63,833 nt of DNA, taken from contig JANJGN010000150.1 of the NCBI GenBank assembly GCA_026770705.1, positions 992,168 through 1,056,000 of the forward strand, in the 5' to 3' direction. Positions 9,502 through 62,217 of this stretch are shown piece after piece (the stretch's first letter is position 1; every line of letters begins with the position of its first letter). The notes beneath the pieces are model-generated. The model had not been told where the DNA came from. It made no database searches and worked only from the letters and a program-made list of their open reading frames with translations. Source of the DNA: Isurus oxyrinchus. Lineage: Eukaryota. A program made the translations under genes and the position numbers.

Positions 9502-9910
9502 TTGCATTTCCGAAAGGCATTCGATAAGGTGCCACATCAAAGGATACTGCACAGGGTGAAATTGGATGGTGTTGGGGGGGATATATTAATATGGATAGAG
9601 GACTGGCTAACTGACAGGAAACAGAGAGCCAGGATAAATGGGTGATTTTCAGCTTGGTAAACTGTAACTTGTGGAGAGCCACAGGGATCAGTGCTGAGGC
9701 CTCAACTATTCACAATCTACATTAGTGACTTGGATGAAGGGACTGACAGTACTGTAGGCAGATTTTCTGACTGTGTGGTTAAGATAGGTGGGAAATATAT
9801 AAACTGAGCAGGAAAGCAAGTTGTGAGGAGGACACAAAGAGGCTGCAGAGGGAGATAAATAGTTTCAGTGAGTGGATAAAAAAATGAGTGGATGGAATAT
9901 AAGGAATGAA
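9502..9910 (+). mobile_element. CR1 RT fragment continuing after the LTR; its 3' part is the start of repeat unit 1
   Basis: Encodes KAFDKVPH...WIEDWL...PQGSVL.PQLFTIYISDLDEG. Confidence 0.85.
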
Positions 9911-10018
9911 AATGCCAGGGTGTCCAGCTGATCCTACTTGTTCTGTTCTTATATTCTTATACAGACACAGGGTTTACTGACAGTGCACAGCAAAGTGCTG
10001 TTCACTCACTTTGTTCCA

Positions 10019-10158
10019 ACTTCCTCATTTTGACTCACAGTGACACATCAGCTCTTTCTAATTAAATACACAGATAGATCAGCACAGGAAGAGGTCATTC
10101 AGCCCAAACAGAACGTGTGGGCAGTTCCTCCCCAGGCGAGCAGTCGGACAGGTCCTGG
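10019..10158 (+). promoter_or_regulatory. Unit 1 putative promoter / non-coding first exon (repeated in all 29 units)
   Basis: PU.1-type ETS site acttcctcatttt (10019-10031), AP-1 tgactca (10031-10037), ETS cores caggaag (10085-10091) and cagttcctcccc (10122-10133), consensus donor G|gtaagt at 10159; TSS not determinable. Confidence 0.55.
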
Positions 10159-10608
10159 GTAAGTAACGGAACGATTGGAATTCACTTCCACAATCAACAC
10201 CGTCCTTTGTTGATGTTGTGACTTTATAAAGACAGATTCCAATGATTGATGCCTTTGAAAGATTTCTACTGATTATTGAGATCTGGGTGTGGGGCTCAAG
10301 TCTGTTGTACAGAACATCTTTCTAGCTCAAGGGATGAGACAAGTGCAGAGACATGAGATTTGGGATGTCCTGAGCAGGTGAAAGGTGCTATAGAAATGCA
10401 AGTCCTTCATTGTTTTTCTTTCTTAAAGCCTAGTAACTCTCTGCAGAGCACCTATCATCCCGCAGAGTATCAAATTAGTCTGTGATGACATTGTCTAAAA
10501 GAAGTTCAGATCTCTCGACAGCTGTCAGACAAGAGGTGAGGTCTCATTAACTCCTTTCTCTTTCACAGCTTGAGAGTGAGAAGCTAATGGAACATCTGCG
10601 AGTGGACA

Positions 10609-10648
10609 ATGATCGGGAAATCTTACTTTCTCCTGTCATTTCTCCAAG
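10609..10648 (+). CDS. Leader exon coding part, unit 1: MIGKSYFLLSFLQ
   Basis: ATG...CAA G|gtaat, phase 1, in frame with V exon 61849. Confidence 0.55.
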
Positions 10649-12318
10649 GTAATATCATCGTCAGCTCGGACAGATTTATGGTTAATTGTCTTTGTAAAAG
10701 ATCATTTTTATTGCGCTCTGATTGGGCAGTGATTCTGCAGTGAGACAGTGTACAAACTCACACCAAGTCCCATTCACCCATCACCCCTGTGCTCACTGAT
10801 ATACACTGACTCCCTGTCTGACAGCAGAATTGGAGGAGAGCAGAAGTCCTGGATGGTTGTAGGGGCTGGAGGAGGTTAGAGGGTTAGGCAGGATTGTAGC
10901 AGCTAGATCAGAATCTTAATCTTCAGGTGATGTCGGATGCTGGTCAGTGAGTCATGGGGAGTGATGAGTTGAGCAGTAAATTAGGAATAAACACTGGGAG
11001 ATGAAGTCTATCCCGATGCTTGGACTCTGAAAGCAATAACCTGAAATGTGTGTCTTTTGCAGATTTTAGACAGAAATTCCCATGAAGACAACACAGCAGC
11101 TCCTAGAATAGACAGGCTGTTCAGTGTCACACTTCCTGTCCATTCTCACCATGCTAGATACTTCAATAAGGGAGCAAGATAACTGAAAGAGAGAAGGAAG
11201 GTAAAGCTGTCTGTGTGTAAAACTGTCAAATATTCTGAGTTATCATGAGTGTATCTGATCTGCTGCAGAGTTTAAATTTCACAGAATCTTAGCACTTTGC
11301 AGCTCAGAGAGAGACCATTGACTCACTGCCTGAAAGGGCGGTGGAAGCAGATTCAACAGGAACTTTCAGAAGGGGAACTGGATAAATACTTGAAGGGGAA
11401 ATTTTGCAGGGCTTTGGAGGAGAGAGCAGAGGAGAGCGTGGGAATAATTAAACAGATATTTCAAAGCCTCAACAATTCACAATCAATATTGGTGACTTGG
11501 ATGAAGGGACTGACTGTACTGTAGGCAGATTTTCTGACTATGTCTGAAAGCAAGTTGTGAGGAGGACACAAAGAGGCTGCAGAGGGAGATAAATAGTTTC
11601 AGTGGGTGGACAAAAAAATGAATGGTTGGCATATAAGGACGGAAAATGTCAGGGTGTCCAGCTGATCCTACTTGTTATGTTCTTATATTCTTATACAGAC
11701 ACAGGGTTTACTGTCAGTGCACAGCAAAGTGCTGTTCTGTCACTTTGTTCCAACTTCCTCTTTTTGTCTCACAGAGATACATCAGCTCTTTCTAATTAAG
11801 CACAGGAAGAGGTCATTCAGCCCAAGCAGAGCGTGTGGGCAGTTCCTCCCCAGGCGAGCAGTCGGACAGGTCCTGGGTAAGTAACGGAACGATTGGAATT
11901 CACTTCCACGACCAACACCGTCCTTTGTTGATGTTGTGACTTTATAAAGAGAGATTCCAATGATTGATGCCTTTGAAAGATTTCTACTGATTATTGAGAT
12001 CTGTGTGTGAGACTCAAGTCTGTCATACAGAGTATCTTTCTGGCTGAAGGGATGAGGGAAGTGCAGAGACATAAGCTTTGGGATGCCCTGAGGTGGTGAA
12101 AGGCGCTATAGAAATACAAATCCTTCATTTTTTTAAAGCCTTGAAACTCCCTGCATAGCACCTATCATCCCACAGCGAACCAAATTAGTCTGTGAAGACA
12201 TTGTCTAAAAACAGTTCTGATCTCTCGAGAGCTGTCGGACAAGAGGTGAGGTCTCATTAAATCCTTTCTCTTTCAGAGTTTGAGAGTGAGAAGCTGATGG
12301 AATTTCTGGGAGTGGACG

Positions 12319-12358
12319 ATGGTCTGGAAATCGTACTTCCTCCTGTCACTTCTCCAAG
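12319..12358 (+). CDS. Leader exon coding part, unit 2: MVWKSYFLLSLLQ
   Basis: Intact ATG, frame and phase-1 donor. Confidence 0.55.
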
Positions 12359-60046: not shown

Positions 60047-60158
60047 CCTTAGACAATGAGGATCCAAAGAGATTCCTTAGACAATGAGGATCCAAAGAGA
60101 TTCCTCAGACAATGAGGATCTAAAGAGATTCCTTTGGCAGTGAGAATCCAAAGAGATT
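60047..60158 (+). repeat. 4 x 28-bp tandem repeat (ccttagacaatgaggatccaaagagatt)
   Basis: Copies start at 60047, 60075, 60103, 60131. Confidence 0.9.
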
Positions 60159-60309
60159 TCTTATTCCATTGGTTGTCTAACTGGGGTCCATGATTTTCCA
60201 AGGGGTCCTTGGCAGAATGAAATTATCGAGCAATAGTGTGTAAAATACCAGAGAGAACGGGAAAGGTGGGATAAATGGAAAACTGTTCACTCTGTTTACA
60301 CTAATGGGA

Positions 60310-60570
60310 GTCAGTCTCAGTAATGGAGACCATGAAACTATCATCGATTGTCATACACACCCATCTGGTTCACTAATGGCCTTTAGGGAAAGAAATCTGC
60401 CGTCTATATCTGGTCTGGCCTACATGTGACTCCAGACTGATGGGAACTTGTCTGACTCTTCAACAGTCCTCTGAAATGTCCGAGCAATCCCCTCCATTCG
60501 AGGGACATTAGGGATGAGCAGCAAATGCTGGCCTTGGCAGCGACGCCCACATCCCATGAATGAATACATT
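60310..60570 (+). mobile_element. SINE body/3' part with CR1-type LINE-derived tail
   Basis: 'ctggttcactaatg..ctttagggaa.gaaatctgccgtc...tacatgtgactccaga...agggatgagcagcaaatgctggccttggcagcgacgcccacatcccatgaatgaata'. Confidence 0.7.
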
Positions 60571-61348
60571 TACAAAATCTTATTACTTGGAAGGTGCAAG
60601 TGCAGGTTGTTATGATCCTTGAGCAGACCCTCTCAGCACTGACCCTACTCCAGCAGACCCTGCGAAACACACTAACAAAGCGCCTCTAGCCTGAGCTCTG
60701 CATGTGTCGGAGGTGCCGCTGTGGTGGGTTCATGACTTTCAAAGATGGTGTTGTTTATTTGTTCAAACTGAACTGGGCCCCACACAAAACGCTGATACCA
60801 GAAACCTCTTGTTCCCTGTCCTTCTGAAATATCCGTGACTTCAGCAGGATTCTGAAGAGTTGCTGATGGAGGAACAGGCACCCAATTTTTTGGGATAATT
60901 TACAGTTAGGAACCAATAATATTTTGTTTCAAGTAGATGAGGTTTGAGATTTAAGATGCTTGCAAAGAGAATAAAGCTACAAGATTCCATGGCTTTTAAA
61001 CAAACAAAAATAAACTTTACTGCACCAGTTCAGAAAGATAAAATAATTCACAATATCCACCTTATAGCCTAATATTCTGTGAAGAGAATAACTAGAGGCC
61101 GAGTGATTGGTGATTCCTTAAACATTGAAGAGGGAATGAACACCAATCAGATTGAATCAGATTAGCCAATCAGCTGTATTGAAGAGCAGACAGGAATGTT
61201 AGGCTAATTAGTGATTTATGACGGTGATAATGGGGGGAGTTCTGAGGGCTCCTAATCCATTGTCCTGTCTTGTAAATCAGCACTGAATGGATCTCAATGG
61301 TGCGTCTTGTAGACACTGTGTTGGGTGGAAGACTGGCTTCACTAAGGG

Positions 61349-61615
61349 GAAGCGGTAGCAGAGAGGTATTGTCACTGGGCTAGTATTCCAGAGGCCCAGG
61401 GTGATGCTCTGGGGCCCTGGGTGTGAATCCCATCACGGCAGATGAATGAAATTAAAAAGCCTGGTTCACTGATCACCTATAGGGAAGGAAATCTGCCACC
61501 CTTACCCAGTCTGGCCTACATGTCACTCCAAACCCACAGCAATGTGGTTGACTCTTAAATGCCTCTGATGGGTATGGGATGGGTAATAAATGCTGGGCAC
61601 ATGCCATTAACGAAT
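61349..61615 (+). mobile_element. tRNA-derived SINE (head with degenerate B-box, LINE-derived tail)
   Basis: Head 'ggtagcagagaggtattgtcactgggctagtattccagag...ggtgtgaatcccatcacggca'; body and tail match 60310-60570. Confidence 0.65.
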
Positions 61616-61848
61616 AATTTGAAAAAAGCTAAACAGGGTCCTGAGGACCATGAGCCAATGTAGAATGAACTTGTCCACTCCTGTGTCCAGGATTCTCTTC
61701 CATCCAATGTGAAACCTTGGGGAGATCCCTGTGTGTCCTGTAGATGGTCCACACTGCAGCACTGTGCCCCAGTGATGGAGGGAGTGGATATCGAATCCAG
61801 TGGATCTACAAACCATCCAGAGTTAAATATTGATATTTCTCTCCCCAG

Positions 61849-62217
61849 TTGGACTGTCACAAGAGTGGAAAGGTGACACTCCACGAGAGGTGACAGCGCA
61901 GGAAGGTTCGTGTGTACAGATTCCATGTCATTACAGTTATCCATCACATTTGGAAAACCAGCCACGAGTCGGAGTCTGGTTTAATAACGAGAATCAGATT
62001 CCTGGATCTCCCATAGCCTTTCACTCCAAGGATCACAGTCACGAGTTACCACGGTTCCGCCAACGGACCCGGCTGTCTGGAGACCTGAAAGATGGCGACT
62101 GTTCCCTGATTATAAACAACATCAGACGGGAAGATGCAGGACCTTATTTTTTCAGAATAGAATTTGACCGAAGTAATAGATACAACTACTATCCTGTAAC
62201 CCGGCTTCACATTTCTG
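61849..62217 (+). CDS. Downstream Siglec-like gene: N-terminal V-set Ig (sialic-acid-binding) domain exon
   Basis: tttctctccccag acceptor, G|gtaagt donor, phase 1-1. Siglec hallmarks: EGSCVQIPC, E-strand Cys GDCSL.I, no F-strand Cys, DAGPYFFRIE with the essential Arg (62154-62156), G-strand aromatics RYNY. Confidence 0.95.

What the first reader, a model, noticed from the sequence alone, without database searches (positions are those of the whole stretch)
9699..62217. A ~50-kb array of 29 promoter + first-exon + signal-peptide-exon cassettes upstream of one Siglec-like receptor gene
Seen: the 'satellite' unit is a copy of a gene's 5' end. Every unit has an exon-like segment ending at a consensus donor (cctgg|gtaagt; gtaatt in units 21 and 25). 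About 410 nt later, 25 units have an exon with a branch-like cattaa, a pyrimidine tract plus AG, an ATG, 13 codons MIGKSYF[L/V/F]LSLLQ and a phase-1 donor. Joined to the phase-1 acceptor at 61849 this reads MIGKSYFxLSLLQ-V-GLSQEWKG..., a signal peptide on a Siglec V-set domain. I found no other leader candidate between the array and the V exon, and no Ig exon inside the array. Established: variable first exons spliced to shared constant exons occur in clustered protocadherins and UGT1A, but there the variable exons encode different mature domains. Inference: here only the promoter, 5'UTR and cleaved leader are multiplied, so the array would change expression dosage, promoter choice or translation rather than ligand specificity, acting as a copy-number-tunable 'promoter battery' for an immune receptor. 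I do not know of a described equivalent but cannot search the literature.
Basis: partly seen in the sequence, partly recalled or inferred. Interest (0 to 1): 0.92.

Follow-up and report, generated by a model that had tools for sequence, protein, structure and literature searches.

The report
Tandem array of Siglec gene front-ends
A shark immune-receptor (Siglec-type) gene is preceded by 29 head-to-tail copies of its own start region (promoter, first exon, signal-peptide exon); the array is real and oddly well kept at one spot, but nothing yet shows that the extra copies drive the gene.

Summary
Window 9699-59629 is 29 head-to-tail units of 1.53-1.76 kb. Each carries a 5'UTR exon ending CCTGG|GTAAGT. 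Twenty-five carry an 82-nt leader exon; 23 of those have an intact ORF.

The leader-to-V-exon join at 61849 is supported by one RNA contig. It also matches NCBI shark Siglec proteins that begin MIGKSYFLLSLLQ-V-GLSQEWKG.

New here:
- The array is a four-unit higher-order repeat of about 6.8 kb. Its copies are 97-98% alike and the four unit types are about 90% alike.
- Both array borders lie in LINE fragments.
- One unit type, present four times, lacks the leader exon.
- The leader coding sequence changes at the background rate.
- The last 28 nt of exon 1 plus its donor is the most conserved stretch. Its three CpGs are intact in all 29 units.
- RNA contigs never show the private letters of units 28 or 29, so they cannot be assigned to this locus.
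- Every leader exon has both splice sites and is 82 nt long, so transcripts from upstream units should often be non-productive.

Best reading: a macrosatellite made from a gene's 5' end, with function unproven. The "promoter battery" idea stays possible at about 0.2. Unchecked scan notes report smaller arrays of this kind at other Siglec genes in this genome.

The parts
9699..59629 (+). Tandem array of 29 units (1526-1762 nt). Units 5-8, 13-16, 17-20 and 21-24, and partly 25-28, form a four-unit higher-order repeat of about 6.81 kb.
   Evidence: Donor motif spacing. Unit identity matrix: 98-99% within types, about 90% between types. Tree of units. Higher-order copies are 96.8-98.3% identical. 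Borders.
57925..59629 (+). Unit 29, the copy nearest the gene body. It is most like type B (93%) and carries many private letters.
57925..58139 (+). Head of the unit: a decayed LINE reverse-transcriptase fragment (PQLFTIYISDLDEGT...). It continues without a break from the LINE fragment at about 8070-9698 in front of the array.
   Evidence: Translations. The motif was recognised from my own knowledge of LINE RT; Pfam gave no hit for the ORF at 8333-8677.
58140..58384 (+). Proximal promoter region and non-coding exon 1. The 5' end is not mapped; one RNA contig aligns from 58265. The exon ends at the donor CCTGG|GTAAGT after 58384.
   Evidence: Alignment. RNA joint from the exon-1 donor to the leader acceptor, laid on the unit-28 copy. 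Exon 1 codes residues 1-14 of the paralogue model P0186.
58355..58391 (+). Most conserved stretch of the unit: the last roughly 30 nt of exon 1 plus the donor. It contains a 23-column invariant run.
   Evidence: 2 changes in the 35 columns 58357-58391, column-shuffle P = 0.006. The 3 exon-1 CpGs (at 58340, 58363, 58371; the first lies just upstream of this block) show 0 changes; the other 15 CpGs show 2-9 each.
58385..58792 (+). Intron 1 (400-409 nt across units).
58793..58874 (+). Leader exon of unit 29 (82 nt). Out-of-frame upstream ATG at 58813, main ATG at 58835, 13 codons MIGKSYFVLSLLQ plus 1 base, phase-1 donor CAAG|GTATTA.
   Evidence: tblastn with P0186 and P0014
57045..57126 (+). Leader exon of unit 28. 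The spliced RNA contig was laid here.
   Evidence: Joints 56635->57048 and 57126|GT..AG|61849 in run X5.
21928..23467 (+). Unit 8, type D: exon 1 is present, the leader exon is deleted. Units 16 (35761-37286), 20 (42556-44096) and 24 (49367-50907) are the same.
15763..15844 (+). Leader exon of unit 4 with the start codon lost (ATA). Unit 11 (27857-27938) has a TGA at codon 10.
58875..61848 (+). Intron between the last leader exon and the V exon. It holds a LINE C-terminal/3' tail (about 59480-59720), an element with 207-nt inverted ends (59764-60838) and SINE-like sequence (about 61340-61600).
61849..62217 (+). V-set exon, phase 1/1, with the Siglec arginine motif FFRIEF. 94% identical to residues 15-136 of Carcharodon carcharias 'Siglec-10' (P0180).
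62618..62914 (+). C2-set exon
63516..63797 (+). Ig (I-set/Ig_3) exon. The gene continues beyond the window.

Best explanation
This is a macrosatellite built from the 5' end of one gene.

Origin. A 1.76-kb segment of a lamnid-shark CD33/Siglec-like gene was duplicated in tandem. The segment runs from a LINE fragment just upstream of the promoter, through non-coding exon 1, intron 1 and the signal-peptide exon, to a LINE tail about 750 nt into intron 2. The first duplication joined two non-homologous LINE positions. Unequal crossing-over then enlarged the array, most recently in blocks of four units (about 6.8 kb).

What is shown. The cassette is a genuine copy of the family's start region: exon 1, then leader, then V exon.

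What is inferred. Most copies are carried along rather than needed for the protein. Productive mRNA probably comes from few units, because any transcript that starts further upstream meets downstream 82-nt leader exons that each have both splice sites. Including them adds upstream ATGs and shifts the frame. The kept exon-1 end and donor suggest that many units can still start or splice transcripts, or bind a factor. The array may therefore modulate expression of the gene, possibly downward, rather than simply multiply it.
For: - Array, unit types and higher-order repeat.
- Borders at 9699 and 59629 inside LINE-derived sequence, with the junction ...tctttcaaa|GCCTCAAC repeated at every unit boundary.
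- The leader-less type D was amplified four times as part of the higher-order repeat.
- Leader CDS changes at 1.04x the baseline rate, with 13 non-synonymous, 11 synonymous and 2 disabling events.
- Leader exon is 82 nt with acceptor and donor in 23 of the 25 units checked; the pattern search missed units 12 and 28. Units 1 and 5 have a shifted AG.
- Family-wide exon model: the X5 contig joins 56635 to the leader acceptor and 57126 to 61849. NCBI proteins start MIGKSYFLLSLLQVGLSQEWKG. P0186 starts in exon 1.
- RNA contigs read the consensus letter, not the private letters of units 28 or 29, at 57105, 58305, 58427 and 58452.
- CpG observed/expected is 0.21-0.25 in the array, as in the flanks, so there is no CpG island.
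Against: - The last 28 nt of exon 1 plus the donor is the most conserved part of the unit.
- The three exon-1 CpGs are intact in 29 of 29 units. Four CpGs within 50 nt downstream, in intron 1, changed 3-9 times each. A purely passive array would not do that, so some constraint acts on at least the dozen or so diverged unit lineages.
- 23 of 25 leader ORFs are still open.
- Whether this particular gene is expressed, and from which unit, could not be determined.
Confidence: 0.5

Rival explanations
1. Promoter battery. Many units are active alternative promoters. Each transcript splices its own leader, or for type D units the next leader, directly to the V exon and skips all other leader exons. 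Copy number or promoter choice then sets the receptor's dose.
For: - The exon-1 end, the donor and three CpGs are kept in all 29 units.
- All 29 exon-1 donors and all 25 leader donors are intact.
- 23 of 25 leader ORFs are open.
- The one spliced contig, as laid, jumps 4722 nt from a leader to 61849 and skips unit 29's leader.
- Unchecked notes report similar 10-fold and 4-fold arrays at other Siglec genes of this genome.
Against: - The leader CDS is not conserved above background.
- Leader exons have strong acceptors and are 82 nt long, so skipping up to 24 of them needs a mechanism for which there is no sign (inference).
- The contig starts its leader exon with AGT. Within this array only unit 2 offers that with a usable acceptor, so the contig probably comes from a paralogue.
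- Summed contig depth over exon 1 is not above that over the V exon (56-121 against 247-535 in X5-X7). This is a weak measure.
Confidence: 0.2
2. Regulatory repeat acting at the DNA or chromatin level. The array works as a block, either by repeat-induced heterochromatin that damps the gene, or as a cluster of factor-binding sites (GGAA/ETS-like cores in the conserved exon-1 block) that acts as enhancer or decoy for the Siglec cluster.
For: - Tandem repetition is reported to trigger copy-number-dependent heterochromatin and silencing of neighbouring genes (review PMC5687341, read).
- The conserved block is short and lies in non-coding exon 1, while the coding leader is free to change.
- No RNA contig carries private letters of units 28 or 29, or the reference letter of this V exon at 61961 in X1 and X6.
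Against: - Conservation stops sharply at the splice donor. That fits an RNA or splicing constraint better than a DNA site.
- No factor site was tested.
- Absence from contigs is not evidence of silence.
Confidence: 0.17
3. Assembly artefact: the copy number or the whole array is produced by mis-assembly of a few copies.
For: Not testable here. Short-read contigs cannot count copies, and DNA runs hold only about a third of the sampled words of the last 5.9 kb.
Against: - Units differ by 1-12% in an ordered pattern, with more divergent edge units and an irregular segment at units 9-12. Assemblers do not invent such a pattern.
- Mis-assembly usually collapses repeats rather than expanding them (own knowledge).
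Confidence: 0.03

Closest known systems
Macrosatellites that carry gene parts or whole genes (D4Z4/DUX4, RS447/USP17, CT47, RNU2)
   Same: Kilobase-sized units lie head to tail in tens of copies, and each unit holds promoter-containing genic sequence. In D4Z4 only the last unit gives a stable mRNA (own knowledge). Copy number can influence local chromatin (PMC5687341).
   Different: Those units hold a complete gene or ORF. Here the unit holds only the promoter, the 5'UTR exon and the signal-peptide exon, and the rest of the gene is single-copy downstream.
Clustered variable first exons spliced to shared constant exons (protocadherin alpha/gamma, UGT1A)
   Same: Many tandem 5' cassettes, each with its own promoter-like sequence, lie upstream of one set of shared exons.
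   Different: In those clusters each variable exon is a single first exon without an acceptor and codes a distinct mature domain (own knowledge). Here the cassette has two exons, the second has a strong acceptor, and the coded part is a cleaved leader only. The units are a young homogenised repeat, not diverged paralogous exons.
Alpha-satellite-type higher-order repeats
   Same: Monomer types about 90% alike are arranged in a multi-unit repeat whose copies are 97-98% alike, with more divergent units at the edges.
   Different: The units are 1.75 kb of genic and LINE-derived sequence, not 171-bp centromeric monomers.
Zebrafish miR-430 cluster (many promoters in tandem)
   Same: A high density of repeated promoters at one locus is the nearest described 'promoter battery' (own knowledge; tandem multi-copy structure in PMC10417697, listed but not read).
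   Different: Each miR-430 unit carries its own product. Here all units would have to feed one downstream gene body.

Membership tests
Siglec (I-type lectin) receptor gene | N-terminal V-set Ig domain | tested here: met
   Pfam V-set E = 4e-14 and Ig_CD22 E = 4e-10 for 61851-62216.
Siglec (I-type lectin) receptor gene | Conserved sialic-acid-contacting arginine on strand F | tested here: met
   The motif GPYFFRIEF is in the V exon. The position was judged by eye against shark Siglec proteins.
Siglec (I-type lectin) receptor gene | V domain followed by C2-set domains; close relatives annotated as Siglecs | tested here: met
   C2-set_2 and Ig_3 exons. 94-98% identity per exon to C. carcharias 'Siglec-10/12/13' models.
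Siglec (I-type lectin) receptor gene | Binds sialylated glycans | not testable with these tools
   Needs a binding assay.
Macrosatellite | Tandem head-to-tail units of at least about 1 kb in many copies | tested here: met
   29 units of 1.53-1.76 kb.
Macrosatellite | Copy number varies between individuals | not testable with these tools
   Only short-read contigs were available.
Macrosatellite | Heterochromatic or methylated state | not testable with these tools
   CpG observed/expected of 0.21-0.25 equals the flanks and does not discriminate.
Variable-first-exon cluster (Pcdh/UGT1A type) | Each variable exon is a true first exon with a donor only, spliced directly to the first constant exon | tested here: not met
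   The cassette has exon 1 plus an internal 82-nt leader exon with a pyrimidine tract and AG acceptor.
Variable-first-exon cluster (Pcdh/UGT1A type) | Variable exons code different mature protein parts | tested here: not met
   Only 13 leader codons are coded, differing mainly at residue 8 (L, V or F).
Variable-first-exon cluster (Pcdh/UGT1A type) | Each unit's promoter is used | tested here: inconclusive
   RNA contigs cannot be assigned to units. Conservation of the exon-1 end is suggestive only.

The most novel reading that the evidence does not exclude
Many of the 29 cassettes are live alternative promoters with 5'UTR and leader exons that feed one Siglec gene body. Receptor dose, or stochastic promoter choice, would then be set by a copy-number-variable repeat. 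The same device would recur at several Siglec genes of this shark. It would be kept by selection on the exon-1 end and donor while the cleaved leader drifts.
Probability: 0.2. Interest if true: 0.8.

Novelty: new variant of a known kind. Interest (0 to 1): 0.55.

Why it matters
If the extra cassettes are used, this would be a way to tune an immune receptor's expression by repeat copy number without touching the protein. I found no described case of that kind, although the literature search here was limited.

If they are not used, the locus is still useful:
- It is a clean example of a higher-order-repeat macrosatellite born from a gene's 5' end.
- It carries a testable puzzle: why the exon-1 end and its CpGs are kept in every copy.
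- It warns annotators that 25 near-identical leader exons upstream of one V exon will confuse gene models and RNA-seq mapping.

Tried and rejected
The 5' ends of paralogous genes could not be fetched to see whether they have one cassette or arrays.
- **Assigning RNA to units** failed. Runs are short Logan contigs of guessed RNA type. The laid contigs carry family-consensus letters. Only one read-laying run was allowed.
- **Looking for this gene's own annotated protein** failed. The best match is 94% on the V exon (P0180, a one-member cluster), so no model of this gene was found.
- **Joined model not searched.** Support for the join comes from NCBI proteins and the contig joint.
- **Structured or known RNA in the unit:** no Rfam match at E <= 1 over 52656-61900. 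Exon 1 folds no better than shuffles, z = 0.06.
- **Conservation as proof of promoter function:** rejected as specific evidence for the wider promoter, because an intronic LINE-tail block (59480-59565) is equally slow (0.50x). Only the exon-1 end with its CpGs stands out.
- **CTCF-like motif in exon 1:** compared by eye with the consensus from memory. Key positions mismatch, so I dropped it.
- **Shared repeats between unit 29 and the non-array parts of the window:** none found (one search gave empty output).
- **Literature:** no paper on shark Siglec clusters or on tandem arrays of promoter and leader cassettes turned up.

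
Full report
**1. What is there**

The motif CCTGGGTAAGT occurs 27 times and CCTGGGTAATT twice, at 44552 and 51363. Spacing is 1526-1762 nt. Cutting at these landmarks gives 29 units that align over about 1.75 kb at 88-100% identity. Homology to the unit begins exactly at 9699 and ends at 59629. The finding's end coordinate of 62217 therefore includes about 2.2 kb of unique intron and the V exon.

Twenty-five units carry an 82-nt exon with these features:
- a pyrimidine tract and an AG acceptor;
- an out-of-frame upstream ATG 20 nt in and the main ATG 42 nt in;
- 13 codons and a phase-1 donor.

Of these 25:
- 21 read exactly MIGKS.
- Units 2, 14, 21 and 28 have substitutions.
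- Unit 4 has lost the ATG and unit 11 has a stop, so 23 ORFs are open.
- Units 1 and 5 have the acceptor AG shifted by 2 nt.

Units 8, 16, 20 and 24 lack the exon because of a deletion of about 220 nt.

**2. The gene behind the array**

- 61849-62217 is a phase-1/1 V-set exon. It hits Pfam V-set and Ig_CD22 and carries the Siglec arginine motif FFRIEF.
- C2-set and Ig exons follow at 62618-62914 and 63516-63797.
- The nearest proteins are NCBI models from Carcharodon carcharias: V exon 94% to P0180 'Siglec-10', and C2 exons 97-98% to P0172, P0162, P0173 and P0180. Cetorhinus comes next at 88%.
- The animal is therefore a lamnid or close relative. No model of this exact gene was found.
- Upstream, 2005-4592 (+) holds the last exons of another family member. 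Its tail contains LLYANP and TEYAQI.
- tblastn with five family proteins finds nothing but leader exons inside the array.
- A scan for other phase-1 hydrophobic starts between 58880 and 61849 gives one weak candidate.

**3. Is the exon model real?**

Yes, for the family.
- NCBI proteins from at least eight shark and ray genera begin MIGKSYF[L/F]LSLLQ followed by V or A and GLSQEWK. That is the leader joined to the V exon exactly as predicted.
- One paralogue model, P0186, begins MGNSSPGEHSDRSW-SLRVRSEW...MIRKSYF. This is exon 1 (here VGSSSPGEQSDRSW) read through into the leader exon, which confirms the exon 1 to leader splice.
- In run X5, one contig of depth 178 joins 56635, the exon-1 donor of unit 28, to the leader acceptor. 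It also joins 57126|GT to AG|61849.
- In X5-X7 most non-repeat intronic bins have depths from 0 to about 45, against 56-535 over the exons. These runs therefore behave as RNA, although their type is only guessed.

**4. Which unit is used could not be told**

At 57105, 58305, 58427 and 58452 essentially every contig reads the letter shared by most units, and never the private letter of unit 28 or 29. In X1 a depth of about 7 out of 42,059 at 58305 does not read the consensus letter.

The X5 contig starts its leader exon with AGT. Within this array only unit 2, which has an aberrant leader, offers that behind a usable AG.

At 61961 in the V exon, X1 and X6 read A, not the window's G. The listed V-exon contigs are 92-98% identical to the window.

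The family is large and shares this leader, so the contigs most likely come from paralogues. Expression of this gene is neither shown nor excluded. Run X1 belongs to a differently labelled organism.

**5. Architecture and origin of the array**

Units fall into four types:

| Type | Units | Leader |
|---|---|---|
| A | 5, 11, 13, 17, 21, 25, 28 | FFLSLLQ in most (unit 28 ILLSLLQ; unit 11 has the stop) |
| B | 6, 9, 14, 18, 22, 26 | FLLSLLQ, codon 2 ATT |
| C | 7, 10, 15, 19, 23, 27 | FVLSLLQ |
| D | 8, 16, 20, 24 | exon deleted |

- Units of one type are 98-99% alike within B, C and D (94-99% within A), and types are about 90% alike.
- The order A-B-C-D recurs with a period of about 6.81 kb. 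These blocks are 96.8-98.3% identical.
- Units 1-4, 12 and 29 are more divergent.
- The first roughly 215 nt of each unit is a decayed LINE reverse-transcriptase piece. It continues seamlessly from the LINE fragment before the array (...GSVLR|PQLFTIYISDLDEGT...).
- Each unit ends in a LINE C-terminal tail (...LPERAVEADSTGTF...). Only after unit 29 does that tail run on to the LINE 3' end.
- The founding duplication thus joined two non-homologous LINE positions. Later growth by unequal crossing-over in four-unit steps fits the pattern (inference).
- With about 10% divergence between types and the slow substitution rates of sharks (own knowledge), the array is probably old.

**6. Signs of constraint**

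I counted parsimony changes per column on the unit tree and compared them with a baseline of 0.63 per column:

| Region | Rate relative to baseline |
|---|---|
| Leader CDS | 1.04x |
| Whole leader exon | 0.90x |
| Core promoter 58150-58250 | 0.66x |
| Exon-1 3' part | 0.53x |
| Intronic LINE-tail block 59480-59565 | 0.50x |

Because the LINE-tail block is equally slow, regional slowness alone is not specific.

In the leader CDS there are 13 non-synonymous, 11 synonymous and 2 disabling events, against 74, 28 and 15 opportunities. That is at most a weak excess of silent changes.

What does stand out:
- The 35 columns 58357-58391, the last 28 nt of exon 1 plus the donor, have 2 changes. This is the lowest of any window, with column-shuffle P = 0.006.
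- The three consensus CpGs inside exon 1 are intact in 29 of 29 units with 0 changes. The other 15 CpGs of the unit changed 2-9 times each.
- That group of 15 includes four CpGs within 50 nt downstream of the donor, which changed 3, 6, 9 and 3 times.
- The chance that the only three unchanged CpGs are the three exonic ones is 1 in 816.
- The sharp boundary at the donor argues for constraint on exon 1 or its splicing across at least the dozen or so diverged unit lineages. Most of the tree's length lies in old branches, so this does not prove that all 29 present copies are in use.
- No Rfam family matches and there is no unusual fold.

**7. How it most likely works**

Shown:
- The array exists.
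- Its units are faithful copies of a real promoter, exon 1 and leader cassette.
- The end of exon 1 is kept while the leader is not.

Inferred:
- Every leader exon has both splice sites and is 82 nt long, which is 1 more than a multiple of 3.
- A transcript starting in unit n would therefore tend to pick up downstream leader exons.
- Each one adds two ATGs and shifts the frame.
- Only transcripts from the last unit or units, or ones that skip all intermediate leaders, would make receptor.

I therefore rank the readings as follows:
- a largely passive 5'-end macrosatellite with a possible modulating, perhaps damping, effect: about 0.5;
- a DNA or chromatin-level regulatory repeat: about 0.17;
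- an assembly artefact: about 0.03.

**8. Comparison and novelty**

The array meets the structural definition of a macrosatellite and of a higher-order repeat. It fails two defining features of protocadherin/UGT1A-type variable-first-exon clusters: those need donor-only first exons and different mature domains.

I found no paper describing shark Siglec clusters or arrays of promoter-plus-leader cassettes.

Unchecked first-stage notes of this scan report a ten-fold array and two four-fold arrays of the same kind of cassette at other Siglec genes of this genome (s1-865393, s1-870042, s1-868811). They also report many paralogues with a single leader. If those notes hold, the phenomenon recurs in the family. 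That makes it more interesting, and this array becomes the largest known instance rather than a unique one.

**9. Limits**

- Only the one read-laying run ran on contigs.
- Copy number, methylation and unit-specific transcription could not be tested.
- N runs at 19-825 and 4821-4999 were left untouched.

Noticed in passing
window 2005-2121, 2823-2948, 4323-4592 (+): These are the last exons of an upstream Siglec-like gene in the same orientation. The tail exon reads ...DELLYANPQIFRVPSGDGSVHREEETEYAQIRFK, with ITIM/ITSM-like tyrosine motifs. It is 92% identical to the C-terminus of C. carcharias LOC121274079 (P0170), whose model repeats this tail twice.
   Followed up: partly
window 3947-4203 and 63025-63382: The same 33-bp minisatellite (GTCAGTACTGAGGGAGTGCTGCACTGTCGGAGG) occurs in opposite orientations, 7.8 and 10.8 copies. 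One copy lies in an intron of the upstream gene and the other between the C2 and third Ig exons of this gene.
   Followed up: no
window 58813 (unit 29) and the same offset in 24 of the 25 leader exons (not checked in unit 12): There is an upstream ATG 22 nt before the main ATG, out of frame here. NCBI models P0014 and P0213 (C. carcharias) start at it (MKYLGVDNDREILLPPVTSP...). In catshark and whale-shark models it is in frame (MKYLEGTMIGKSYF, MKYLGATMIGKSYF). It may act as a translational brake shared by the family.
   Followed up: partly
window 59764-59970 / 60632-60838: A pair of 207-nt inverted repeats, 95% complementary and 661 nt apart, with a 28-bp tandem repeat (60004-60171) between the arms. 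It looks like a non-autonomous DNA transposon in the leader-V intron.
   Followed up: no
window 56697-56893 (intron 1 of unit 28; equivalent 58446-58642 in unit 29): Summed RNA-contig depth here (222, 106 and 42 in X5-X7; 16,852 in X1) is as high as over the exons. The individually listed contigs are shallow. The segment includes a conserved intronic block (58440-58480, 0.58x rate). It is unexplained: it could be an alternative exon or a dispersed repeat.
   Followed up: no
window 57288-57484 and 59100-59290: This is the fastest-changing part of the unit (1.8x baseline). It holds a 33-nt repeat (GGCTGGAGGAGGTTACAGAGATAG...). The repeat draws very high RNA-contig depth (up to 246,000 in X5) and 'goes back 33' joints, so it is a very abundant genomic repeat.
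   Followed up: no
window 8070-10150 (+): A decayed LINE fragment with reverse-transcriptase motifs runs into unit 1 of the array. The ORF at 8333-8677 gave no Pfam hit at E <= 0.01.
   Followed up: partly
window 17527-17608 (unit 5): Unit 5 is the only unit whose leader exon is open in frame upstream of the ATG (SLRVRSEWNIWEWTMIGKSYFF). This resembles the paralogue model P0186, which starts translation in exon 1.
   Followed up: no
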